Virus record (IMG/VR): IMGVR_UViG_3300035703_000005
Coordinates: 62,001-126,000 of that record
Strand: one strand, 5' to 3'
Length of the DNA stretch: 64,000 bases
Below are positions 16,700 through 47,182 of this stretch, piece by piece (position 1 is the first letter of the stretch; each line of letters opens with the position of its first letter). Below the pieces are notes generated by a model. It did not search any database and was not told the DNA's origin. It saw nothing but the letters and a program-made list of their open reading frames with translations. The position numbers and the translations under genes are program-made.

Positions 16700-16820
16700 T
16701 AAAAGGGTAAGTATAAGTCCAGGGGGTTCTGGATGTTACAGTATTCCCCACAACACCCTCCATTGTGGGTATGAGAGACGTAATTTATACACCCTAGAGG
16801 TCTCGGTTTACGGGGTGTTA
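16700..16820 (-). ncRNA. structured psbA leader, PhotoRC-II-like
   Basis: AAACCGAGACC...CGTCTCTCATA plus paired segments upstream of psbA; recognised from memory. Confidence 0.6.
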
Positions 16821-16904
16821 CAAAGATTAAGAATTATGAGGAATCCTTAACATTTGTTTACCTATTTATCATACCACTGCTATAAAACCCTGTCAAGAGC
16901 CCCC

Positions 16905-34567: not shown

Positions 34568-34571
34568 GTAA

Positions 34572-34645
34572 CTCAGGCTCGCCACTTGTTTTGAGTACGA
34601 GAAAACAAGAAACTCGGCGGGGTTTCCCCATCCACACCAGTCGGC
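34572..34645 (-). ncRNA. wcaG RNA motif-like element
   Basis: Two UGGYG motifs (CUGGUGUGG; GUGGCGAG), GGGG-AAA-CCCC and CUUGUUUU/AAAACAAG stems, upstream of a sugar epimerase. Confidence 0.65.
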
Positions 34646-34696
34646 ATATTTAATGTCCAATCCGACGAGGACAAAATGGGTCATTGACTCCACCAC

Positions 34697-36053: not shown

Positions 36054-36126
36054 TGCTCGATGAGAGGATCGAACTCTCCTGGGACCGATTATGAGTCGGG
36101 TGCTTTCACCAGATAGCTAATCGAGC
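36054..36126 (-). tRNA. tRNA with CAT anticodon (probably Ile2)
   Basis: Cloverleaf; CCGA-CTCATAA-TCGG arm. Confidence 0.85.
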
Positions 36127-37419: not shown

Positions 37420-37438
37420 AGTTGTTGTATTTATTAAG

Positions 37439-37512
37439 TCGGAACGATAGGACTTGAACCTACGACTTCCAGCTCCCAAAGCAGGCGCTCTACCAAACTG
37501 AGCTACGTTCCG
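37439..37512 (-). tRNA. tRNA-Pro(TGG)
   Basis: Cloverleaf. Confidence 0.93.
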
Positions 37513-39739: not shown

Positions 39740-40671
39740 ATAGTACTCCTATTGTGGATAAGCGTTATTTAATCCCCAAGTTATAAAAAGCATGATTGAT
39801 CCAAATATACAAATTGTAGAGAAAGTTAGTCTGTGCATCTTACCCCCCACTACCGTTTCTGAAACCTATCATATATCCAATCAATAATCCACACATAAAT
39901 GACACAAACATGTAAAGGACATGAGACGTAAACTCAATAAATTCAATCCATTCTGTATTCTTCATCGTCCTCATAAGTAGATGGTTCTTCAAAAAGTTCA
40001 TCCATTTTTTGTTGTAGAACTCTTTGTTGCAGTTCTTCTAAATCCTCTTCTGTAAGAATTATCATTTGTCCTTAAGTAATTCCTCTATTCGTTTACGCAT
40101 GTTTGTACTTTCTTGTTTCATATAATCTCTGAGAGAATATCCTCTTTGACCTTTCATAATACAAGTTCCTTGATAGAACATTGTAACGGCAAATACCAAT
40201 AATAAAACTATACCAATTATTTCAGAGTAATGTTGAGCCATGGCAGTAAAGGTGGAATGATACCAATTAATCGGAGAAGTCCCTCAGCAAATAAAGCAAG
40301 AACCACCCAACCAACACACATAGAAATAATGGAAGCATTCCTATTGTGCCTTCGTATAGAAGCATCAATCATCTCCTGTACTTCAGAACGACTTACGGAT
40401 TCAGCATTATCAATATCCATTTTTATCATCTCCAAGATATTTCGATAAAGGATCTTTTTTGGTTTTGACAATCTCACACGCTCTTTTATAGAACATATTA
40501 TCCGTATTACCAGAGGCTTCAAAAGTAGCCTTGATCTTCACCCAATTACCGTAGGTGTGGTCGTCCATGAGGTTATTAACTTGTACATAATTATATAATA
40601 ATCACGGAAGCTATAACGTCAACCTTATGTGTTCATATCGTAACACTGATTAAGCAAATATTAAAATAAAA

Positions 40672-40756
40672 CGGAAAGGAGAGGATTCGAACCTCCGGAT
40701 GCTCTCACATCGACTGTTTTCAAGACAGTTGCCTTAAACCACTCGGCCACCTTTCC
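40672..40756 (-). tRNA. tRNA-Ser(TGA)
   Basis: Class II cloverleaf. Confidence 0.93.
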
Positions 40757-40759
40757 ATA

Positions 40760-40848
40760 CGGAGAATGTTGGATTCGAACCAACGGAGAAGCATAAACTC
40801 CTCAAGAACTTAGCAGGTTCCCGCCTTAAACCACTCGGCCAATTCTCC
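40760..40848 (-). tRNA. tRNA-Ser(GCT)
   Basis: Class II cloverleaf. Confidence 0.93.
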
Positions 40849-41099
40849 TATCGGATTTCGAAATCCAGTTTACGAACCTTACGAGCTCGTCTGGACTCCT
40901 GGAAAGCAAGTTCAGATGGACTGAACACACTATCCCTTTTGTTTTCTTTAATTGAGTTTAACATAACTACTTGATTTAAGTCAACAGCAGTGATAGTGTC
41001 TCCTTTTACAAGTGTCATATTATCACACCCACAGCATACCGATTTAGTTGGATGCGACTCCAACTCGGTGTTACACACTTTGCATCTTACTCTTAACAT
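40848..41099 (-). CDS. Zn-binding hypothetical protein
   Basis: CKVC...CGC. Confidence 0.6.
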   Translation of the reverse strand: MLRVRCKVCNTELESHPTKSVCCGCDNMTLVKGDTITAVDLNQVVMLNSIKENKRDSVFSPSELAFQESRRARKVRKLDFEIR

Positions 41100-41115
41100 T
41101 GTCTTATACCTTTAA

Positions 41116-41637
41116 TTAATCTTCAGTTGTTTCTTCTACTTGAATTTCAGATTCTTCTTGTTCTTCAATTTCTTGAACTTCTTCTTTTGCGAGTCCAGGA
41201 GAGGATTCAAGATACGATCTCAACATCCAAACAAATTTTCCATGAGACTCATTTAGATCATCTATAAGATTTGAAGTTGCTCTGGACTTCTGAGCATCAG
41301 CTTCCTCAGCAACTTCAGTAAATAGATCACACAAATCTTGATTTGATTTTAACAGATCTCTTACCATTTTATGGCAATCTGTTGTACTTTGTCCAGTTTT
41401 GACTTTGGAAACTTCTACAATTCTTTCTAAACTATTAAGTGGTTTTACATTTAGAAACCTCATGTGTTCAGAGATACGATCGATCTCCTCAAACATTGTT
41501 TCATACTGATCACCAAAAAGAGTATGAAGTTGTGGAAAATCTTCTCCAATTACATTCCAATGATACGCCCATGTCTTATGAAATAAGACAAATAGGGATG
41601 CTTGTGCATCACTTAGTAGTTTAAAAAGTGTTTCCAT
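41116..41637 (-). CDS. dps: Dps mini-ferritin with an acidic tail
   Basis: HWNV.G.DF..LH..F...Y...D..SE, K.VWML; late promoter at 41658-41665. Confidence 0.92.
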   Translation of the reverse strand: METLFKLLSDAQASLFVLFHKTWAYHWNVIGEDFPQLHTLFGDQYETMFEEIDRISEHMRFLNVKPLNSLERIVEVSKVKTGQSTTDCHKMVRDLLKSNQDLCDLFTEVAEEADAQKSRATSNLIDDLNESHGKFVWMLRSYLESSPGLAKEEVQEIEEQEESEIQVEETTED

Positions 41638-41667
41638 TATACAGATACTTTTTCAAGTATTTATAAG

Positions 41668-41739
41668 TGGGCAATATCGGATTCGAACCAATGACCAACT
41701 GCGTGTAAAGCAGCTGCGCTACCGCTGCGCTAATCGCCC
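41668..41739 (-). tRNA. tRNA-Val(TAC)
   Basis: Cloverleaf. Confidence 0.93.
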
Positions 41740-41740
41740 G

Positions 41741-41948
41741 TGGGGGTGGTGAGATTCTGTCATACTCACAATCGGGAAGGTTACACTGACAACGTATTTC
41801 CCAACACTTAGGTTCTTCTTGGTGAGAAGTTCTATACCTTTGATTTCTCAACGATACAGCGGGCACCACCCCTAACCTATTACATTATCCCGTGAGTAAC
41901 CACAAGGATTGTTCTGTCACACCCAGAGAACTCCCGTCGAAGTTCTCA
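41741..41948 (-). ncRNA. multi-stem structured RNA, possibly the manA motif
   Basis: GGGGUGGUG/CACCACCCC closing stem, internal stems, repeated UGACAGAA, ACUCAC/GUGAGU complement. Confidence 0.55.
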
Positions 41949-41950
41949 AG

Positions 41951-42022
41951 AGCGGAATACCGGATTCGAACCGGTGACATCCAACTTGGAAGGATGGCGT
42001 TCTACCACTGAACTAATTCCGC
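41951..42022 (-). tRNA. tRNA-Gly(TCC)
   Basis: Cloverleaf, U73. Confidence 0.93.
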
Positions 42023-42061
42023 AATAAGACAATTATAGAGTAGTTGAGTATAATTGTCAAG

Positions 42062-42144
42062 TGCTCCAGAGAAGATTTGAACTTCCACGCTTTTTAAGGC
42101 GGCGGATTCTAAGTCCGCTGTGTCTACCGTTCCACCACTGGAGC
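42062..42144 (-). tRNA. tRNA-Leu(TAG)
   Basis: Class II cloverleaf. Confidence 0.93.
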
Positions 42145-42262
42145 TAATTTTTAATTGATGAGTAGTGAGTGCCCACCACTCGCAGAAGACACTTTCTGCA
42201 ATTTTCACTGCATTAGAGGGCAGTGATGATATGAAAGAATCGGAAATTTCCAACCCTTCCAA

Positions 42263-42335
42263 CTCCCCCAGTCCGACTCGAACGAACAACCCCAGAGTTA
42301 ACAGCTCCGTGCTCTGCCAATTGAGCTATAGGGGA
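42263..42335 (-). tRNA. tRNA-Asn(GTT)
   Basis: Cloverleaf, U1-A72. Confidence 0.9.
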
Positions 42336-42386
42336 ATATAGGGGAAAGGAGAGCTCTTGGGCGAACCCGCAGGATCACTTTCCCAG

Positions 42387-42459
42387 TGGAGAATAGGAGA
42401 CTCGAACTCCTAACCTTTGCCTTGCAAAGGCACTGCTCTACCAATTGAGCTAATCCCCC
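42387..42459 (-). tRNA. tRNA-Ala(TGC)
   Basis: Cloverleaf with G3.U70. Confidence 0.94.
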
Positions 42460-42462
42460 ATT

Positions 42463-42537
42463 TGGTGGCGGGGGGTGGAATTGAACCACCTACCTGAAGC
42501 TTATGAGACTTCTGTGCAACCGTTACACTTCCCCACT
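42463..42537 (-). tRNA. tRNA-Met(CAT), initiator-like
   Basis: A1xC72 mismatch, encoded CCA. Confidence 0.85.
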
Positions 42538-42540
42538 ATA

Positions 42541-42776
42541 AGGCCGCTTTTCACGGCACCGTAACACTTTCTTTACAGGGCTGTTATCACCCCGTCTCTC
42601 TATACTAGGGCAGTAGTCTTACTGCGAGAGAATGCAACAATGTTGTTTGCGTTTGTTTTTTGTCCCGTCAACAGATACAACCTTACCACCTCGTCGAAAC
42701 CTTGGCAACCCCTAGTTATGGAGTTGTGGGGAGTCGAACCCCAGTCCGAAGCAACAGACTTTGCATCCTCTTGAAC
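42541..42776 (-). ncRNA. ssrA: two-piece (circularly permuted) tmRNA
   Basis: Acceptor piece ends GGACTGGGGTTCGACTCCCCACAACTCCA at 42719; 6-nt spacer; coding piece starts GGGGTTG...GGTTTCGAC at 42712; tag ANNIVAFSRSKTTALV* at 42600-42650. Confidence 0.92.
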
Positions 42777-42783
42777 ATAGTAT

Positions 42784-42812
42784 ATAGTATACTAAAATTA
42801 TTCAGTTGTCAA
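42784..42812 (-). promoter_or_regulatory. sigma70-type promoter of the tmRNA
   Basis: TTGACA-N17-TACTAT. Confidence 0.7.
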
Positions 42813-42813
42813 G

Positions 42814-42900
42814 CGGAGAGAGAGGGATTTGAACCCTCGGTGAAGTTACCCCCACACAGACTTTCCAGGTCTGCTCCTTAAGCCACTCGGACACCTCTCC
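42814..42900 (-). tRNA. tRNA-Ser(GGA)
   Basis: Class II cloverleaf. Confidence 0.93.
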
Positions 42901-42937
42901 AACATAAACATCATACCATAATTACGGAAGATGTCAA

Positions 42938-43011
42938 CACTCTCTGCAGGATTTGAACCTGCGACACATCGGTTCGTAGCCGATTGCTCTAGTCCACTGA
43001 GCTAAGAGAGT
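42938..43011 (-). tRNA. tRNA-Arg(ACG)
   Basis: Cloverleaf. Confidence 0.93.
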
Positions 43012-43014
43012 AGG

Positions 43015-43086
43015 CGAAGGGCCAGAGACTTGAACTCTGATCTTTGGTTTTGGAGACCAAGATGCTACCAATTGCACCAACCCAAC
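43015..43086 (-). tRNA. tRNA-Trp(CCA) with two U.U acceptor-stem mismatches
   Basis: Intact D, anticodon and T arms; acceptor GTTGGGT/GCCCTTC. Confidence 0.75.
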
Positions 43087-43087
43087 A

Positions 43088-43164
43088 TGGTATCCGTGAG
43101 AGGATTTGAACCTCCAACAAATAGATCCTTAGTCTATTGCCTCTTCCAATTGGGCTACACGGAC
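43088..43164 (-). tRNA. tRNA-Leu(AAG) with a short variable loop
   Basis: ATAGA-CTAAGGA-TCTAT; A73; encoded CCA. Confidence 0.8.
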
Positions 43165-43167
43165 AAA

Positions 43168-43839
43168 CTATAAGATTCCGAAAAGTTTACATCTTTTACG
43201 AATAGCATTATCAGAAACTCCAAACATTTTACCAATAGAAACTAAAGAATAAGAAGCAAGAAGTTTTTGAAGTTCTTCTTTAGATACTTCAAATTTTCTT
43301 TTTCTTGGAATTGAAATTCTAGGTTTTTTAACCCTTTTTACATTCCTACCAGCAAATGTATCAGTTTGACTATTGCAGTTTGGACATAAAAATCTTAGAT
43401 TTTCTAATCTATTATCATTAGGAATTCCATTTATATGATCTAAAACCATAGATAAAGGATTTCCATTCCATTTAGGTTCCAATCCACAATTGAAGCAAGA
43501 ATAAGAAATAATATTTTCTTGTATTAGTCTTGCCCTAATAACACTCCTAGAAGTGCTACTATTTTCAACAAATAGTATATTATTTGGAATTTTATTTTTA
43601 CTAGGACCAAATTTTTTTCCTTTATTGGAATCAAGTCCTTTTTTTATATGAGAAGTATCAATTTTTTCATATTCTATTCTTCTTTTTAGTGTGTTTATAT
43701 TAGAACCTTGAGAAAATATATTAAGTTTTCTCAAAATCTCAGAATAAGAAGAACTATCAGAAACAATTAATTCTAGTTGTTTTTTTGGAACAGACCATAA
43801 GATACTTCTTTTTTTTCTGGATTTATTTTGATTTGACAT
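43168..43839 (-). mobile_element. free-standing HNH endonuclease inside the tRNA array
   Basis: CFNC...LDHINGIPNDNRLENLRFLCPNC; late promoter at 43860-43867. Confidence 0.9.
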
Positions 43840-43911
43840 AGTAATTATTCTTTATTAGTTATTTATAACACATAAAGTCAAAAAATACTAGTCTTACCAT
43901 TATAAATCCAA

Positions 43912-43986
43912 ATCCCAAGGCAGGCTTCGAACCTGCAAAAATTCTCCTTCAAAGGGAGATAGCTTTACCAGTTTGCTCACTTGGGA
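43912..43986 (-). tRNA. tRNA-Gln(TTG)
   Basis: TCTCC-CTTTGAA-GGAGA; U1-A72. Confidence 0.85.
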
Positions 43987-43992
43987 ATTAGG

Positions 43993-44068
43993 AGTTCAGG
44001 GTGGGATTTGAACCCACGGTGAAAGAAGTTTTGCAGACTTCCGCATTCGACCACTCTGCCACCTGAAC
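43993..44068 (-). tRNA. tRNA-Cys(GCA)
   Basis: Cloverleaf, U73. Confidence 0.9.
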
Positions 44069-44101
44069 ATTTGAACTATCTGGAATTTCCAGATAATTGA
44101 G

Positions 44102-44172
44102 AGCCCAATAACAGAATTGAACTGTTCTCTGCAGTTTACTAAACTGCTGCATCACCACAATGCTTATCGGGC
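44102..44172 (-). tRNA. tRNA-Thr(AGT)
   Basis: GCAGT-TTAGTAA-ACTGC. Confidence 0.85.
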
Positions 44173-44174
44173 GG

Positions 44175-44246
44175 GGTGCCATATGAGATTTGAACTCATC
44201 TACCCAGTTTCACAAACTGGTTCCTTAACCACTAGGATAATGGCAC
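44175..44246 (-). tRNA. tRNA-His(GTG)
   Basis: CCAGT-TTGTGAA-ACTGG. Confidence 0.88.
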
Positions 44247-44247
44247 A

Positions 44248-44319
44248 AGGCAGTGGGTAGAATTGAACTACCGACATAGAGGGTATGAATCTCTTGTTCT
44301 ACCACTGAACTACACTGCC
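44248..44319 (-). tRNA. tRNA-Met(CAT), elongator-like
   Basis: Cloverleaf, loop TTCATAC. Confidence 0.85.
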
Positions 44320-44323
44320 AAGT

Positions 44324-44413
44324 AGGGAGAGGGTGGAATCGAACCACCATTGCCAATGGACGGAATCGAACCGTCTCTGATACCGTCGTATCCACCATCC
44401 AAGGTGCTCTCCC
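44324..44413 (-). ncRNA. tRNA-like RNA with two T-arms and no 7-nt anticodon loop
   Basis: GGGAGAG/CTCTCCC stem; GACGG-TTCGATT-CCGTC and GGTGG-TTCGATT-CCACC. Confidence 0.7.
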
Positions 44414-44426
44414 ATATCGTAGGTGT

Positions 44427-44509
44427 ATCATTTGAGAGGATTCGAACCTCCATTGCCGCCTCCAAAACGCAAGTGCTATGGCGGAGTGTTACCGTTACAC
44501 TACAAATGA
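44427..44509 (-). ncRNA. tRNA-like RNA (Gln-like body) with a 19-nt anticodon loop
   Basis: Intact acceptor, D and T arms; CCGCC-N19-GGCGG. Confidence 0.7.
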
Positions 44510-44725
44510 TATCCTTACGTTGCTTACTCCTAGATTCTACTCATCAGATTTACTTGTTGGACCTAATCGTTGGAATACTCGCTGCGTTCAACTTATTACC
44601 CTGTCTCGACTTGAACGAGACTGTTTTCTATAGCCTTTGCGTTTGTTAGTAATAAGCATACTGACAGGTTTCTTTTACCTTTCAGTTTTCCGTTCAACCC
44701 AACTTTGGAATAAAGTTTGGGCAAG

Positions 44726-44797
44726 TGGAACCGACAAGATTTGAACTTGTGACCGCTCGGTTATCAGCCGAGTGCTCTACCACTGAGCTACGATTCC
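44726..44797 (-). tRNA. tRNA-Ile(GAT)
   Basis: Cloverleaf. Confidence 0.93.
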
Positions 44798-44917
44798 ATC
44801 AAGGTAGGAGTCGATATCAACAACCTACCAGTTTCAGTTTTCGGACTGAAAAACCTATCACTAACCAACCGAAGTTTCATAACGGAGAAAGTGAATCTCC
44901 GTGACCATAAGGTCAAG

Positions 44918-44991
44918 AGGGAACAATCGGATTTGAACCGATAACACCATGATCTTCAATCATGTGCTCTACCAATTGGAGCTATGTTCCC
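44918..44991 (-). tRNA. tRNA-Phe(GAA)
   Basis: Cloverleaf. Confidence 0.92.
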
Positions 44992-44994
44992 AAG

Positions 44995-45068
44995 TCCAGA
45001 TGAAAGGATTTGAACCTCCGACTTCTCCGCCCCAAACGGAGCGCTCTACCAAACTGAGCTACACCTGG
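44995..45068 (-). tRNA. tRNA-Pro(TGG), second divergent copy
   Basis: CTCCG-TTTGGGG-CGGAG. Confidence 0.9.
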
Positions 45069-45069
45069 A

Positions 45070-45144
45070 TGGTAGTCCTAACGGGATTTGAACCCGTGTC
45101 TTCACTGTGAAAGAGTGATGTCCTCACCACTAGACGATAGGACC
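45070..45144 (-). tRNA. tRNA-Glu(TTC)
   Basis: Cloverleaf with encoded CCA. Confidence 0.93.
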
Positions 45145-45323
45145 AGATGGGAGGGGTATCCCACACGAAGTTACTTACGGATTACGCTTCGTAGCCTTAT
45201 GAATCCTGCCATCATCCGATGGTGGCTAGAAATCCCTCCCCAATTCCAGTTATTACTACAACATTCTTCTGCAAACTGGCAACCTCTGAAGAATGCGTGG
45301 AGATTCGTACTGATGATCTCCAA

Positions 45324-45397
45324 CGACCCATAGGGGATTTGAACCCCTGATCTCCTCTTGGACAGAGAGGCGCGTTAGACCGCTACGCTAATGGGCC
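45324..45397 (-). tRNA. tRNA-Asp(GTC)
   Basis: Cloverleaf, G73. Confidence 0.92.
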
Positions 45398-45444
45398 AAG
45401 AGCACAATCCACTACCAATGGTATCATTGGGCAGATCATGCAGT

Positions 45445-45534
45445 GAGAGAGGAGGGAATTGAACCCCCGATGGTTCTTATGTACGTGTTTTACAGACACG
45501 GACTACACATATTGCCGACAGTAGCCACTCTCCC
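45445..45534 (-). tRNA. tRNA-Tyr(GTA) with an enlarged D arm
   Basis: CGTGT-CTGTAAA-ACACG; long variable region. Confidence 0.8.
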
Positions 45535-45929
45535 TAGATTTTATACTGCAAATAATTTTCACCAAGATTGATTGAGTTTTTATTATCTTTTATGATGTCT
45601 TTGGGAATAAGATACTTATCACCATCAGCAGTTAGTATGAATAACTGGTCATAAAAGATTTCAGTATTGAGTTTATTGACAAAATTAGATTTACTATTTC
45701 CACCAGTAATCCTCAATCCCACTACATATTTTCCACTAGAAGATTTGGAGTTAGTTGTCTTTACTTGTATTTTTTGTAATCCAAGTTCAGGAAACTCAAC
45801 AATCAAATCGTAATCTTGACTATCTGTTAATGGGATAGAAACAGTATATCCAAGACCACAAAAGTGGGCAATACAAATACCCAATCCAACATCACCTTGT
45901 TTCTTGGTGTTTTTGCAGTTATGGAACAT
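45534..45929 (-). mobile_element. free-standing PD-(D/E)XK endonuclease (group I intron-associated type)
   Basis: KKQGD.G...VSIPLTD...YDLIV...KIQVKT; late promoter at 45955-45962. Confidence 0.85.
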
Positions 45930-45978
45930 ATCTTATAACGGAGTAATACTCTGTTATTTATAAGAGTTATGTTCCATA

Positions 45979-46051
45979 TGGGTCTGGTGGGACTCGAACC
46001 CACGATATACTGGTTAAAAGCCAGGTGCATTAGCCGCTATGCAACAGACCC
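45979..46051 (-). tRNA. tRNA-Lys(TTT)
   Basis: Cloverleaf. Confidence 0.92.
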
Positions 46052-46239
46052 AAATAATATAGGATAAATATTCGGTTGTCTAGGTTCGGTGTGGTCTCTC
46101 TCAACCACTCGATTAGAATACCACCATTTGAACTCTGATTGGAGGATGGTGGACACTTGGGAAACTGTCACAAGCAACAAAAAAGGGGAGGAAACTTTTG
46201 GTTTCTCTCCCCTTCTTTTGCTTTTATGGATTAAACATC

Positions 46240-46341
46240 TTACATATGTCTTTCCATATCCGCAAACAGGGGAGCACCCTCAATATGCCAATAGCGGCAA
46301 TCGAGAATACTAAACTGTTTTGTGGGCATTGGGTAAGACAT
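46240..46341 (-). CDS. 33-aa peptide with its own late promoter and terminator
   Basis: MSYPMPTKQFSILDCRYWHIEGAPLFADMERHM; TATAAATA at 46363-46370; hairpin at about 46178-46215. Confidence 0.55.
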   Translation of the reverse strand: MSYPMPTKQFSILDCRYWHIEGAPLFADMERHM

Positions 46342-46394
46342 TGTTTTCGACCTAAGTGTTTTTATTTATAAGACTTTTTTGTTAAAAAGTCAAG

Positions 46395-46467
46395 CACCCC
46401 TGGTAGGATTTGCACCCACGACCAACGGCTTAGAAGGCCGATGCTCTATCTACTGAGCTACAGGGGC
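46395..46467 (-). tRNA. tRNA-Arg(TCT)
   Basis: Cloverleaf; T loop TGCAAAT. Confidence 0.9.
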
Positions 46468-46534
46468 ATGTTTGGTATGAAGTTATTATAGTGGGGGAAG
46501 GGTTTTCTGTCAACCCCTCCCTCCTATTTAATTG

Positions 46535-47182
46535 TTAAACTTCTACCTTGATCAGACGGGATGCATAATCATAAGCATAAGATGTGCGAGCACCATGATG
46601 CCCCCATCCAATCCAACTATACGCATAGTCCATATAACGATTGATAGACTTACCAGGAATTTTCATTCGGTCTTCAATCTCTTTCCATTGGACTTCATTT
46701 GTTAGATAACGAAGTTGCGTGTGAAGTGATGATGGTGAACCACCAAACTTCCTAGCAAAATCACCCAATCCATAATAACGATTGGCAGATGTCCATTGAA
46801 TCAGTCCGTAACCACCATCGCAGTTACGCCAACTGGTTCTGCTACCACCTTCGCAAATGTTAGGAATAAAAGTTGATTCCTGACGAATATTGCCCATAAT
46901 GGTAGCAAGGGCGTTTCTGTCTTTAATACCACGATCCTGGAAGTATGCCAGGGTAGCATTCTCATGTTCATTACACCCTTTACAAATTAACCTTAACTCT
47001 TTAGGTTTTTCGGGAGCAACCTCGCGGATTGCTGTCTTTGATGTAGGCTCCTCTTGAACAATTGCGAAAGGTGGTTTTGAAGGACCATTCACGGGTGGAG
47101 GAGGAAACACTGAAGGCAGTGATGCCGTTGTGGTTGTAACCGTTGCCAAAAGAGGCAGGGTTACTGTAAAGAAATTTTGCAT
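46535..47182 (-). CDS. exported lysozyme-like cell-wall hydrolase (phage lysozyme2-like)
   Basis: Signal peptide, Pro-rich linker, IMGNIRQES, GYGLIQWT. Confidence 0.8.
   Translation of the reverse strand: MQNFFTVTLPLLATVTTTTASLPSVFPPPPVNGPSKPPFAIVQEEPTSKTAIREVAPEKPKELRLICKGCNEHENATLAYFQDRGIKDRNALATIMGNIRQESTFIPNICEGGSRTSWRNCDGGYGLIQWTSANRYYGLGDFARKFGGSPSSLHTQLRYLTNEVQWKEIEDRMKIPGKSINRYMDYAYSWIGWGHHGARTSYAYDYASRLIKVEV

What the first reader, a model, noticed from the sequence alone, without database searches (positions are those of the whole stretch)
41741..45441. Top candidate: tRNA array interleaved with about ten structured non-tRNA RNAs
Seen: many inter-tRNA spacers are GC-richer than ordinary spacers here and fold by eye into multi-stem elements: 41741-41948, 42155-42262, 42341-42385, 44324-44413, 44427-44509, 44510-44722, 44802-44915, 45148-45241, 45246-45322 and 45402-45441. 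Several are closed by acceptor-like G-rich/C-rich stems, and several have loop-loop complements. Known: RNase P and 3' processing release whatever lies between tRNAs, and phage tRNA arrays can host ncRNAs (GOLLD, Y RNAs, theta ribozymes). Inference: the phage uses tRNA punctuation to produce a set of small RNAs acting on translation or on host defence.
Basis: partly seen in the sequence, partly recalled or inferred. Interest (0 to 1): 0.85.

Follow-up and report, generated by a model that had tools for sequence, protein, structure and literature searches.

The report
Small structured RNAs inside cyanophage tRNA array
A cyanobacterial virus has packed its cluster of tRNA genes with at least five conserved, folded non-tRNA RNAs, four of which match no Rfam family, so the cluster probably also serves as a production line for small RNAs of unknown function.

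Summary
The window is an uncultured T4-like cyanophage, and its tRNA array lies on the minus strand. The ten listed spacers are GC-richer than the window (39-60% against 35%), but they are not ten separate new RNAs.

- Item 1 is the known manA RNA.
- Item 4 is a conserved tRNA-like RNA that cannot decode. It has two T arms and a GACG tetraloop where the anticodon loop should be.
- Item 5 is a cloverleaf with an invariant 19-nt loop. Together with item 6 it forms one composite unit of about 300 nt.
- Items 8 and 9 are one 175-nt RNA between tRNA-Asp and tRNA-Glu.
- The 3' part of item 2 is a conserved triple hairpin.
- Item 3 is a small hairpin with weak support.
- Items 7 and 10 have only near-identical copies, so no structure can be tested.

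Covariation supports the two-T-arm RNA, the cloverleaf, the triple hairpin and the main helices of the Asp-Glu RNA. None of these four matches Rfam 15. Exact-motif scans of reference bacterial genomes for the two-T-arm and Asp-Glu RNAs gave nothing real. Two of the four also occur, unannotated, in one cultured phage each (S-CREM1, S-SRM01).

Release of these RNAs by tRNA-processing enzymes is inferred, and their function is untested. The closest precedent is the pair of small RNAs (species I and II) in the phage T4 tRNA cluster.

The parts
40671..46467 (-). Core of the tRNA array. It holds 24 canonical tRNAs called by ARAGORN plus the non-canonical tRNA-Tyr. Two more tRNAs lie at 36054-36126 and 37438-37512, giving 27 in the window. 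All 20 amino acids are covered.
   Evidence: ARAGORN, Rfam tRNA hits, tRNA-Tyr alignment
41739..41946 (-). manA RNA (a known Rfam family). It sits 3 nt after tRNA-Gly and abuts tRNA-Val.
   Evidence: RF01745 scores 109.3 bits against a gathering score of 55.2. The same motif is tRNA-flanked in S-CREM1 (Asn/Leu) and L023 (Ala/Met).
42032..42060 (-). Consensus sigma-70 promoter TTGACA-N17-TATAAT. It fills the Leu-Gly spacer, which looks like a hairpin.
   Evidence: 12 of 12 consensus matches. This spacer type is conserved in relatives (cluster 4).
42158..42226 (-). The loops AGUGUC and GGCAC are conserved. The 5' hairpin at 42232-42261 varies or is replaced in relatives.
   Evidence: Alignment A11 has 12 distinct sequences, 97% of cells paired and 10 pairs with compensatory change; 0 of 500 shuffles reach the score. 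Fold z-score -6.3. It is present, unannotated, in cultured phage S-SRM01.
42341..42385 (-). Small hairpin (item 3). It has a 7-bp acceptor-like closing stem and an apical GGG-UUCG-CCC stem.
   Evidence: Five variants show GGGAAAG/CUUUCCC against GGGGAAG/CUUCUCC, and GGG/CCC against GGA/UCC. There are few sequences, so support is weak. z-score -2.0.
42543..42798 (-). Permuted (two-piece type) tmRNA with tag ANNIVAFSRSKTTALV. A promoter-like site lies at 42784-42812.
   Evidence: RF01851 scores 105.8 bits against 70, and RF04321 scores 78 bits. ARAGORN calls it tmRNA*. Promoter scan gives 10 of 12 matches.
42910..42937 (-). Sigma-70 promoter TTGACA-N16-TATGAT with an extended TG, in the Arg-Ser spacer.
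   Evidence: 11 of 12 consensus matches.
43168..43839 (-). HNH endonuclease ORF (223 aa) inserted in the array. A TATAAATA motif lies upstream at 43860-43867.
   Evidence: Pfam HNH_3 and HNH, both just below their cut-offs. Motif position.
44324..44413 (-). Two-T-arm tRNA-like RNA ('2T', item 4). It has a 7-bp acceptor stem, a 4-bp D-like arm, a 5-bp stem capped by a GACG tetraloop in place of the anticodon arm (44379-44392), a T-arm-like hairpin in the variable-arm position (44359-44375) and a true T arm (44332-44348).
   Evidence: Alignment A6 has 16 distinct homologues, with 100% of 400 cells paired and 6 compensatory pairs; 0 of 500 shuffles match. With model R1, members score at least 105 bits, a diverged tandem copy scores 44 bits and ordinary tRNAs score at most 32 bits. 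Rfam's tRNA model gives no hit. ARAGORN's anticodon call is inconsistent between homologues: Leu-CAG, Ser-CGA or none.
44426..44510 (-). Cloverleaf with an invariant 19-20-nt loop in place of the anticodon loop (item 5). Motif M2, CAUAGCACUUGCGUUUUGG, lies at 44462-44480.
   Evidence: Alignment A10 has 10 distinct sequences, with 100% of 210 cells paired and 9 compensatory pairs; 0 of 500 shuffles match. Rfam tRNA scores 49 bits. ARAGORN calls it tRNA-???.
44511..44724 (-). 5' domain of the same composite unit (item 6). Motif M1, AAACGCAAAGGCUAU, lies at 44630-44644. It sits inside a helix formed by 44649-44657 and 44592-44599, with an internal hairpin at 44605-44619.
   Evidence: M1 lies 131-166 nt upstream of M2 in every full-length instance, and 57 nt upstream in the deletion variant L071. 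That includes a very diverged copy in a 455-kb phage contig, where the enclosing helix covaries. Within cyanophages the domain is at least 94% identical, so no helix can be tested. Fold z-score -1.6.
44798..44916 (-). Phe-Ile spacer (item 7). Several hairpins are predicted.
   Evidence: z-score -3.4. Only copies at 96-100% identity were found. The few changes are not compensatory. Structure is unproven.
45145..45322 (-). Asp-Glu RNA (items 8 and 9 are one unit).
- Variable hairpin P0 (45299-45321).
- Hairpin Pa (45288-45296 with 45261-45269). Its loop segment CCAGUU (45274-45279) can pair with AACUGG (45246-45251).
- Domain B, closed by P1 (45234-45240 with 45149-45155) and P2.
- A distal pseudoknot (45202-45206 with 45179-45183, crossing 45187-45193 with 45164-45170).
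   Evidence: It occurs in 32 IMG/VR loci, 29 of which show tRNA-Asp upstream and tRNA-Glu downstream. Pa has 5 compensatory pairs; 0 of 500 shuffles reach the score. P1 and P2 have 3 compensatory pairs. Crossing helices are kept in three unrelated sequence versions. It is 83% identical to an unannotated S-CREM1 spacer.
45399..45442 (-). Hairpin between tRNA-Tyr and tRNA-Asp (item 10).
   Evidence: z-score -4.2. Only identical or near-identical copies were found, so it cannot be tested.
45443..45537 (-). Non-canonical tRNA-Tyr(GUA). It has a 5-bp D stem, a 14-nt D loop and an unstructured 15-nt variable region.
   Evidence: It aligns with ARAGORN-called Tyr(gta) and 'Arg(gcg)' homologues, shares the anticodon loop CUGUAAA, and shows compensatory changes in the anticodon stem. 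ARAGORN and Rfam's tRNA model both miss it.
45534..45929 (-). PD-(D/E)XK endonuclease ORF (131 aa) inside the array. A TATAAATA motif lies at 45955-45962.
   Evidence: Pfam PF11645 scores 65.8 bits. Motif position.
46053..46393 (-). Arg-Lys spacer, which is a small gene cassette. It holds a promoter with TATAAATA (46363-46370), a conserved 33-aa ORF (46240-46341), an intrinsic terminator (46179-46213), a covarying hairpin element and a promoter for tRNA-Lys (46054-46082).
   Evidence: An alignment of 25 distinct homologues shows synonymous-type changes and in-frame indels in the ORF.

Best explanation
The region is the heart of a cyanomyovirus tRNA super-array on the minus strand. It is transcribed in several units from consensus sigma-70 promoters that sit in the short AT-rich spacers.

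At least five conserved structured RNA modules lie between the tRNAs:
- the known manA RNA;
- a triple hairpin;
- a two-T-arm tRNA-like RNA that cannot decode;
- a composite RNA of about 300 nt that ends in a cloverleaf with an invariant 19-nt loop;
- a 175-nt RNA between tRNA-Asp and tRNA-Glu with predicted pseudoknots.

A permuted tmRNA is also present. None of these modules has a promoter of its own, and they end 0-15 nt (mostly 0-4 nt) from the next tRNA or tRNA-like unit.

The most likely mechanism is co-transcription with the tRNAs. RNase P would cut at the 5' end of the downstream tRNA, and RNase Z or RNase E would cut after the upstream tRNA. This would release the modules as discrete stable small RNAs, in the way phage T4 encodes its RNA species I and II within its tRNA cluster. 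The two tRNA-shaped modules would themselves be substrates of these enzymes.

Shown here: conservation, covariation, strand, position and absence from Rfam. Inferred: release by processing, and a trans-acting role on tRNA- or ribosome-associated factors, suggested by the tRNA mimicry.
For: - Covariation is positive for four modules. 2T: 100% paired, 6 compensatory pairs. Cloverleaf: 100% paired, 9 compensatory pairs. Triple hairpin: 97% paired, 10 compensatory pairs. Asp-Glu RNA: Pa with 5 compensatory pairs, P1/P2 with 3.
- The distal pseudoknot of the Asp-Glu RNA keeps its topology in three unrelated sequence versions.
- Many of the pairs are G-U, which fixes the RNA strand as the tRNA strand.
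- The modules recur in IMG/VR arrays at fixed or shuffled tRNA junctions.
- The promoters lie in other spacers, not in these elements.
- Apart from manA, the modules have no Rfam 15 match at E up to 1.
- The exact 2T motif is absent from 185,579 reference genomes, and all 13 genome matches to the Asp-Glu motif are chance.
- The T4 tRNA region also holds RNA species I and II and a homing endonuclease gene (PMC2330249).
Against: - There are no expression or RNA-end data of any kind.
- Folding energies of several elements are no better than shuffled sequence.
- The Asp-Glu pseudoknot CCAGUU/AACUGG and the M1/M2 pairing are invariant, so covariation cannot test them.
- Items 7 and 10, and the 5' domain of the composite within cyanophages, have only near-identical copies.
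- Many related arrays lack one or several modules, so none of them is essential.
- The alignments come from exact-motif searches, so the anchor motifs are conserved by construction.
- Related sequences can exceed shuffle controls without any real structure.
Confidence: 0.6

Rival explanations
1. The spacers are cis-acting parts of the tRNA operons. They would be promoters, terminators, or structured insulators and nuclease entry sites that keep neighbouring tRNAs folding and maturing correctly, with no function once released.
For: Three short spacers are consensus sigma-70 promoters, and one long spacer carries a terminator. Items 3 and 10 are simple hairpins. Hairpin P0 of the Asp-Glu RNA keeps only its pairing, not its sequence.
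Against: Insulation does not need invariant loops (AGUGUC, GACG, the 19-nt M2), double T arms or pseudoknots kept across unrelated sequences. Many arrays join the same tRNAs with spacers of 0-3 nt.
Confidence: 0.2
2. The tRNA-shaped elements (44324-44413 and 44426-44510) are real decoding tRNAs of unusual form. Examples would be recoding or frameshifting tRNAs, or a tRNA with a short intron.
For: Both have acceptor, D and T arms with perfect pairing. Rfam's tRNA model scores the second at 49 bits. ARAGORN calls both.
Against: The first has a 4-nt GACG loop on a covarying 5-bp stem, so it has no anticodon. ARAGORN's anticodon call changes between homologues. The second has an invariant loop of 19-20 nt. 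The array already covers all 20 amino acids. No splicing system for 12-nt bacterial tRNA introns is known to me (own knowledge).
Confidence: 0.08
3. The elements are decaying tRNA genes, or scars left by the homing endonucleases and recombination that shuffle the array. They would be neutral DNA shared because of recent common descent.
For: HNH and PD-(D/E)XK endonuclease genes sit in the array. Module positions differ between arrays. Items 6, 7 and 10 exist only as near-identical copies. L071 carries a deletion that breaks the cloverleaf.
Against: Neutral decay would not keep 97-100% pairing through 6-10 compensatory pairs per element. It would also not keep two 15-19-nt motifs identical in a 455-kb phage whose flanks have diverged.
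Confidence: 0.07
4. The larger elements (manA, the Asp-Glu RNA) are ligand-sensing cis-regulators, that is riboswitch-like, controlling downstream expression. Rfam classifies manA this way.
For: manA is filed as a candidate riboswitch (PMC2864571). The Asp-Glu RNA has an invariant core and pseudoknot-like folds.
Against: Here and in two other arrays manA is followed directly by a tRNA, not by an ORF. The Asp-Glu RNA is followed after 3-4 nt by tRNA-Glu, with no terminator or ribosome-binding site to control.
Confidence: 0.05

Closest known systems
Phage T4 RNA species I and II, encoded in the T4 tRNA gene cluster
   Same: They are small non-tRNA RNAs encoded among the tRNA genes of a T4-type phage, next to a homing endonuclease gene (segB in T4; HNH and PD-(D/E)XK ORFs here) (PMC2330249). 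From my own knowledge, they are co-transcribed and processed with the tRNAs, and their function is still unknown.
   Different: No sequence comparison was possible with these tools. Here there are more modules, and they are modular and shuffled between arrays. Two are explicit tRNA mimics, and a tmRNA and a manA RNA are also present.
manA RNA motif (Rfam RF01745)
   Same: 41739-41946 is a full-length member at 109 bits. The family is known from T4-like cyanophages (PMC2864571).
   Different: The family is filed as a cis-regulatory 5'-UTR element. Here and in two relatives it is embedded between tRNAs with junctions of 0-3 nt, which fits a processed small RNA better.
Canonical tRNA (Rfam RF00005)
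   Same: The two tRNA-like modules share the acceptor stem, the D-like arm, the T arm with a UUCGAUU/UUCGAAU loop, and their place in the array.
   Different: The 2T RNA has a tetraloop hairpin instead of an anticodon arm, has an extra T-arm hairpin, and gets no RF00005 hit. The other has a 19-20-nt invariant loop.
tmRNA (two-piece cyanobacterial type, RF01851) and bacterial Y RNA-like YrlA (RF02553)
   Same: Both are tRNA mimics that do not decode by an anticodon. A real permuted tmRNA lies 1.6 kb away in the same array. M1 shares the 12-mer AACAAACGCAAA with that tmRNA's resume-codon region.
   Different: The composite unit is not hit by any tmRNA model. It has a complete cloverleaf with an anticodon-type arm, and changes in its tag-like frame are non-synonymous. 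YrlA scores only 20-24 bits against 69, and only on T arms. I did not look for a Ro60 gene.
Other RNAs hosted in phage tRNA arrays (GOLLD, HDV-like theta ribozymes)
   Same: They share the genomic habit: structured RNAs placed next to or among phage tRNAs.
   Different: No Rfam hit to GOLLD or any HDV-like, hammerhead, twister, pistol or hatchet model at E up to 1. The predicted topologies are H-type pseudoknots and cloverleaf variants, not a nested double pseudoknot.

Membership tests
manA RNA (RF01745), for 41739-41946 | Covariance-model score above the curated gathering score | tested here: met
   109.3 bits against 55.2, with the full model length 1-192 matched.
manA RNA (RF01745), for 41739-41946 | Position in the 5' UTR of a protein-coding gene (cis-regulatory class) | tested here: not met
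   It lies between tRNA-Gly (41950-42022) and tRNA-Val (41667-41739). It is also tRNA-flanked in S-CREM1 and L023.
tRNA (RF00005), for 44324-44413 (2T) | Covariance-model score above the gathering score | tested here: not met
   There is no RF00005 hit, even at E up to 1 with lax filters.
tRNA (RF00005), for 44324-44413 (2T) | Anticodon arm with a 7-nt loop carrying an anticodon | tested here: not met
   A 5-bp covarying stem is capped by a 4-nt GACG loop (GUCG in one homologue). ARAGORN's anticodon call differs between homologues.
tRNA (RF00005), for 44324-44413 (2T) | 7-bp acceptor stem stacked on a 5-bp T stem with a T loop | tested here: met
   All cells are paired in helices 1 and 5 of alignment A6.
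tRNA (RF00005), for 44426-44510 | Covariance-model score and four-arm cloverleaf | tested here: met
   49.2 bits against 29. The cloverleaf is 100% paired with 9 compensatory pairs.
tRNA (RF00005), for 44426-44510 | 7-nt anticodon loop | tested here: not met
   The loop is 19-20 nt and invariant in all 10 distinct sequences and in the diverged L085 copy.
tmRNA, for the composite 44426-44724 | Match to a tmRNA covariance model or an ARAGORN tmRNA call | tested here: not met
   There are no tmRNA-family hits at E up to 1, and ARAGORN makes no tmRNA call there. The same holds for L085.
tmRNA, for the composite 44426-44724 | Conserved tag-peptide reading frame | tested here: not met
   The changes between variants in the candidate frame are all non-synonymous, and the frame differs in L085.
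Permuted tmRNA (RF01851), for 42543-42798 | Model score, tag ORF and G3-U70 acceptor pair | tested here: met
   105.8 bits against 70. ARAGORN reads the tag ANNIVAFSRSKTTALV. The acceptor GGGGUUG/CAACUCC, read from the sequence, contains G3-U70.
Y RNA-like YrlA (RF02553) | Model score above the gathering score | tested here: not met
   The best hits score 20.8-24.2 bits against 69 and cover only T-arm positions of ordinary tRNAs.
Self-cleaving ribozymes and GOLLD in Rfam 15 | Any model hit in 40500-46600 | tested here: not met
   None is listed at E up to 1. I did not check whether Rfam 15 holds a model specific to theta ribozymes.
T4 RNA species I/II | Sequence or structure homology to T4 rnaC/rnaD | not tested
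   I made no comparison with T4 sequence. The likeness is one of genomic habit only (PMC2330249).

The most novel reading that the evidence does not exclude
Some of these modules may be a new class of phage tRNA mimics that act on the host's tRNA or ribosome-rescue machinery.

The two-T-arm RNA has no anticodon but carries two tRNA 'elbow' elements. It could be a decoy or sponge for factors that recognise the T arm, the elbow or the acceptor end, such as processing or modification enzymes, or tRNA-targeting defence nucleases and toxins.

The composite RNA is a cloverleaf whose invariant 19-nt loop is complementary to an upstream motif. That motif resembles the resume-codon region of the phage's own tmRNA. 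The composite could therefore be a self-tethered tRNA-message mimic that interferes with or redirects trans-translation.
Probability: 0.18. Interest if true: 0.85.

Novelty: new variant of a known kind. Interest (0 to 1): 0.62.

Why it matters
Phage tRNA clusters are usually read as codon-usage or counter-defence kits. This array shows that, in one clade of cyanophages, the same transcription and processing line probably also makes a set of conserved structured RNAs.

- Four of the RNA families appear to be undescribed. They have no Rfam match, are unannotated in the cultured phages that carry them, and were not found in the literature searched.
- Two are tRNA mimics with unusual architecture: a double T arm in one and a giant invariant loop in the other.
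- The manA motif, filed as a cis-regulator, looks here like a processed small RNA.
- Two of the new families occur in cultured phage-host pairs: the 2T and Asp-Glu RNAs (with manA) in S-CREM1 on Synechococcus CB0101, and the triple hairpin in S-SRM01. The half-century-old question of what small RNAs in T4-type tRNA clusters do could therefore be tested directly.

Tried and rejected
- **Known families.** I checked whether any spacer matched a known family. Apart from tRNAs, only manA and the tmRNA reach their thresholds in the array, and the YrlA hits are sub-threshold T-arm matches.
- **Item 6 as a small ORF or tmRNA tag.** The frame AKAIENSLVQVETG** is open, but the differences between variants are all non-synonymous and the diverged L085 copy has a different frame. 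Rejected.
- **M1/M2 complementarity by shuffling alone.** Only 4.9% of shuffles do as well, which is marginal. The case for it rests on the two motifs always occurring together and never varying.
- **Pseudoknot CCAGUU/AACUGG.** I searched IMG/VR with anchors that left both strands of the pseudoknot free. No new loci came back, so it stays untestable.
- **Diverged homologues of items 6, 7 and 10.** nhmmer over all fetched loci found only near-identical copies. RNAalifold on the composite found compensatory pairs only in the cloverleaf.
- **Hammerhead-like CUGAUGAG.** It occurs in a relative's Arg-downstream spacer but is not conserved.
- **Published catalogue of 10,006 viral structured RNAs.** I could not check whether it already lists these elements, because no supplement text is held.
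- **Reference genomes.** Of the two motifs scanned, the 2T motif has zero matches, and the 13 matches to the Asp-Glu motif lack the flanking signature, so they are chance.
- **Short 'hairpin' spacers.** 42023-42060 and 42901-42936 are promoters.

Full report
**Identity of the window**

The window is an uncultured T4-like cyanophage. Locus L028, from a 248,835-bp IMG/VR contig, is 100% identical to every array element compared. The closest cultured phage is Synechococcus phage S-CREM1 of the family Kyanoviridae, but identity there is only 76-78% and mostly within tRNAs. Rfam also finds the cyanophage motifs PhotoRC-II and wcaG elsewhere in the window.

**The array**

ARAGORN genes on the minus strand. 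Three of these calls are not ordinary tRNAs: a permuted tmRNA, a 'tRNA-Leu(CAG)' and a 'tRNA-???'. One real tRNA was missed, a non-canonical tRNA-Tyr(GUA) at 45443-45537. The window therefore holds 27 tRNAs covering all 20 amino acids.

Consensus sigma-70 promoters sit in the short AT-rich spacers on the minus strand. They are at 46513-46485 and 42060-42032 (both 12 of 12 matches), 42937-42910 (11 of 12) and 42812-42784, just before the tmRNA (10 of 12). The short spacers that look like hairpins are therefore transcription signals.

Protein ORFs inside or beside the array are an HNH endonuclease, a PD-(D/E)XK endonuclease, a conserved 33-aa ORF with its own terminator, and a ferritin-like protein. 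Each is preceded by the T4-type late-promoter motif TATAAATA.

**Check of the observation**

The ten listed intervals are GC-richer (0.39-0.60) than the window average of 0.353. Folding energy alone separates only some of them from shuffled sequence. The z-scores are -6.3, -4.2 and -3.4 for items 2, 10 and 7, but only -0.6 to -1.6 for items 5, 6, 8 and 9. I therefore relied on homologues and covariation.

**Item 1 (41741-41948)**

This is the known manA RNA, at 109 bits against a gathering score of 55. It is flanked directly by tRNAs here (Gly and Val). The same is true in S-CREM1 (Asn and Leu) and in locus L023 (Ala and Met). That fits poorly with its Rfam class of 5'-UTR cis-regulator (PMC2864571).

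**Item 4 (44324-44413), the two-T-arm RNA**

ARAGORN calls it tRNA-Leu(CAG), but Rfam's tRNA model does not hit it at all. A motif scan of IMG/VR returned 35 loci with 16 distinct sequences.

The fold has five parts:
- a 7-bp acceptor stem;
- a 4-bp D-like arm;
- a 5-bp stem capped by a GACG tetraloop where the anticodon arm should be;
- a T-arm-like hairpin in the variable-arm position;
- a true T arm.

All 400 alignment cells form standard pairs, and six pairs change on both sides. No shuffle of 500 matches this. A covariance model separates members (at least 105 bits) from ordinary tRNAs (at most 32 bits). It also finds a diverged tandem copy in L057 at 44 bits, which keeps the GACG hairpin and both T arms.

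ARAGORN assigns Leu-CAG, Ser-CGA or nothing to different homologues. This is expected if there is no anticodon. The motif is absent from 185,579 reference genomes. In S-CREM1 it lies in an unannotated Phe-Ile spacer. A relative, L023, carries an element with three T arms.

**Items 5 and 6 (44426-44724), a composite unit**

Item 5 is a cloverleaf. It is 100% paired in 10 distinct sequences, with nine compensatory pairs spread over all four stems. One variant has a textbook D arm. In place of a 7-nt anticodon loop it has an invariant loop of 19-20 nt, which I call M2.

Every full-length instance found in IMG/VR and in metagenomes also has motif M1 (AAACGCAAAGGCUAU) 131-166 nt upstream, inside item 6. 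In the deletion variant L071, M1 lies 57 nt upstream. The two chance matches to M2 lack both M1 and a T arm.

A very diverged copy lies in a 455-kb phage contig (L085/L091), between tRNA-Asn and tRNA-Pro. It keeps M1 and M2 letter for letter while the rest has diverged. The helix that encloses M1 covaries between the two versions (GCUUAUUAC/GUAAUAAG against GUAUUAACAG/CUGUUAAUAU).

M1 and M2 are complementary: 5 bp, a 2x2 internal loop, then 8 bp. Because neither motif varies, the pairing cannot be tested by covariation, and by shuffling alone it is only marginal at 4.9%. M1 shares a 12-mer with the resume-codon region of the phage's own tmRNA. Even so, no tmRNA model hits the composite, and its tag-like frame changes non-synonymously.

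Within cyanophages item 6 is at least 94% identical, so its own helices cannot be tested. No GenBank phage record matches the composite.

**Items 8 and 9 (45145-45322), one RNA between tRNA-Asp and tRNA-Glu**

An 18-nt junction motif found 32 IMG/VR loci; 29 of them show tRNA-Asp upstream and tRNA-Glu downstream. The RNA has these parts:
- Hairpin P0 keeps its pairing but not its sequence.
- Hairpin Pa has five compensatory pairs, and no shuffle of 500 reaches its covariation score.
- The loop segment CCAGUU of Pa can pair with a downstream AACUGG. Both are invariant, and a search that left them free found nothing new.
- Domain B is closed by a 7-bp G-rich/C-rich stem and a 5-bp stem with three compensatory pairs.
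- The distal part of domain B forms two crossing helices in three unrelated sequence versions, with compensatory changes in a fourth. Short versions replace it with a hairpin whose stem and loop contain the conserved GAUUUUAAAU.

Rfam has no match. The matches in bacterial genomes are chance. Among 50,697 GenBank phage records, only S-CREM1 carries this RNA, and it is unannotated there. The S-CREM1 paper lists Rfam hits only (PMC9964418).

**Item 2 (42155-42262)**

The 3' 69 nt form three hairpins with conserved loops. In 12 distinct sequences 97% of cells are paired and ten pairs are compensatory; no shuffle of 500 reaches the score. The first of the three hairpins exists in two unrelated sequence versions. 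A fourth, 5' hairpin varies. Cultured phage S-SRM01 carries the element unannotated.

**Items 3, 7 and 10**

Item 3 is a 45-nt hairpin with a few compensatory changes. Items 7 and 10 occur only as copies at 96-100% identity, and their few changes are not compensatory. They may be structured, but nothing here shows it.

**How it most likely works**

None of the supported modules contains a strong promoter. They lie 0-15 nt (mostly 0-4 nt) from the flanking tRNAs or tRNA-like units, and they are on the tRNA strand, as the many G-U pairs show. The simplest reading is co-transcription with the tRNAs followed by release by RNase P and RNase Z or RNase E. This step is inferred.

The array is modular. 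The same modules occur at different tRNA junctions or are absent in related arrays. Homing-type endonuclease genes sit among them, as segB does in the T4 tRNA cluster, which also encodes RNA species I and II (PMC2330249).

Function is unknown. Two modules mimic tRNAs and a tmRNA is present, which makes action on tRNA-binding or ribosome-associated factors the most attractive guess, but nothing here tests it.

**Novelty and limits**

Four module families appear to be undescribed: the two-T-arm RNA, the composite with the 19-nt loop, the Asp-Glu RNA and the triple hairpin. They have no Rfam 15 match, are unannotated where they occur in cultured phages, and did not turn up in the literature I could search. 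A published catalogue of 10,006 viral candidate RNAs could not be checked. The kind of thing, small RNAs housed in a phage tRNA cluster, is known.

The alignments were gathered by exact-motif scans, so the anchor motifs are conserved by construction and diversity is limited. There are no expression data.

Noticed in passing
window 42543-42798 (-), promoter-like site 42784-42812: The phage encodes a permuted (two-piece type) tmRNA with tag ANNIVAFSRSKTTALV. Related arrays carry homologues with slightly different tags. blastn also matches unannotated DNA in the cultured cyanophages S-CAM1, S-CAM3 and S-CRM01. I did not look for a phage smpB gene.
   Followed up: partly
window 46363-46370, 45955-45962, 43860-43867, 41658-41665 (-): The T4-type late-promoter motif TATAAATA lies about 20-25 nt upstream of each protein ORF inside or beside the array: the 33-aa ORF, the PD-(D/E)XK ORF, the HNH ORF and the ferritin-like ORF. 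The tRNAs instead follow TTGACA-N17-TATAAT promoters. This suggests two temporal classes of transcription interleaved on one strand.
   Followed up: partly
window 46053-46393 (-): The Arg-Lys spacer, about 335 nt in most related arrays, is a mini-cassette. It holds a conserved 33-aa ORF (46240-46341) with synonymous-type variation and in-frame indels, an intrinsic terminator (46179-46213), and a covarying hairpin followed by GUGGUUGAGAGAGACCAC. That last module is duplicated in some relatives.
   Followed up: partly
window 45443-45537 (-): A non-canonical tRNA-Tyr(GUA) with a 5-bp D stem, a 14-nt D loop and an unstructured 15-nt variable region. ARAGORN and Rfam's tRNA model both miss it. ARAGORN calls some homologues Arg(gcg). 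Its D loop contains GGCAAU, which also occurs in the linker of the two-T-arm RNA.
   Followed up: partly
window 41739-41946 (-); L002 4217-4431; L023 1853-2068: The manA RNA is embedded between tRNAs in three different tRNA contexts. This argues for a processed small RNA rather than the 5'-UTR regulator given by its Rfam class.
   Followed up: partly
L023 4307-4446; L017 665-737; L085 6804-6866; L057 689-780: Other multi-T-arm elements occur in related arrays. One has three T-arm hairpins closed by an acceptor-like stem. L057 holds a tandem, diverged second copy of the two-T-arm RNA.
   Followed up: partly
window 43168-43839 (-) and 45534-45929 (-): HNH and PD-(D/E)XK endonuclease genes are inserted among the tRNAs, recalling segB in the T4 tRNA cluster. 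They may drive the shuffling of modules seen between arrays.
   Followed up: no
window 44069-44100 (-): A 32-nt near-perfect palindrome lies between tRNA-Thr and tRNA-Cys (fold z-score -5.4). It is conserved in L021, L064 and L035. It is neither a consensus promoter nor a terminator, and might be an operator or a processing hairpin.
   Followed up: no
L001 3869-3921 (S-CREM1, Ile-Ser spacer): A 12-bp hairpin whose loop contains AUCGCACUUGGGUU, which matches the invariant M2 loop at 12 of 14 positions. It sits at the equivalent array position, just after tRNA-Ile.
   Followed up: no
window 16733-16830 (-) and 34571-34674 (-): Known cyanophage RNA motifs: PhotoRC-II (82 bits) and wcaG (60 bits).
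   Followed up: no
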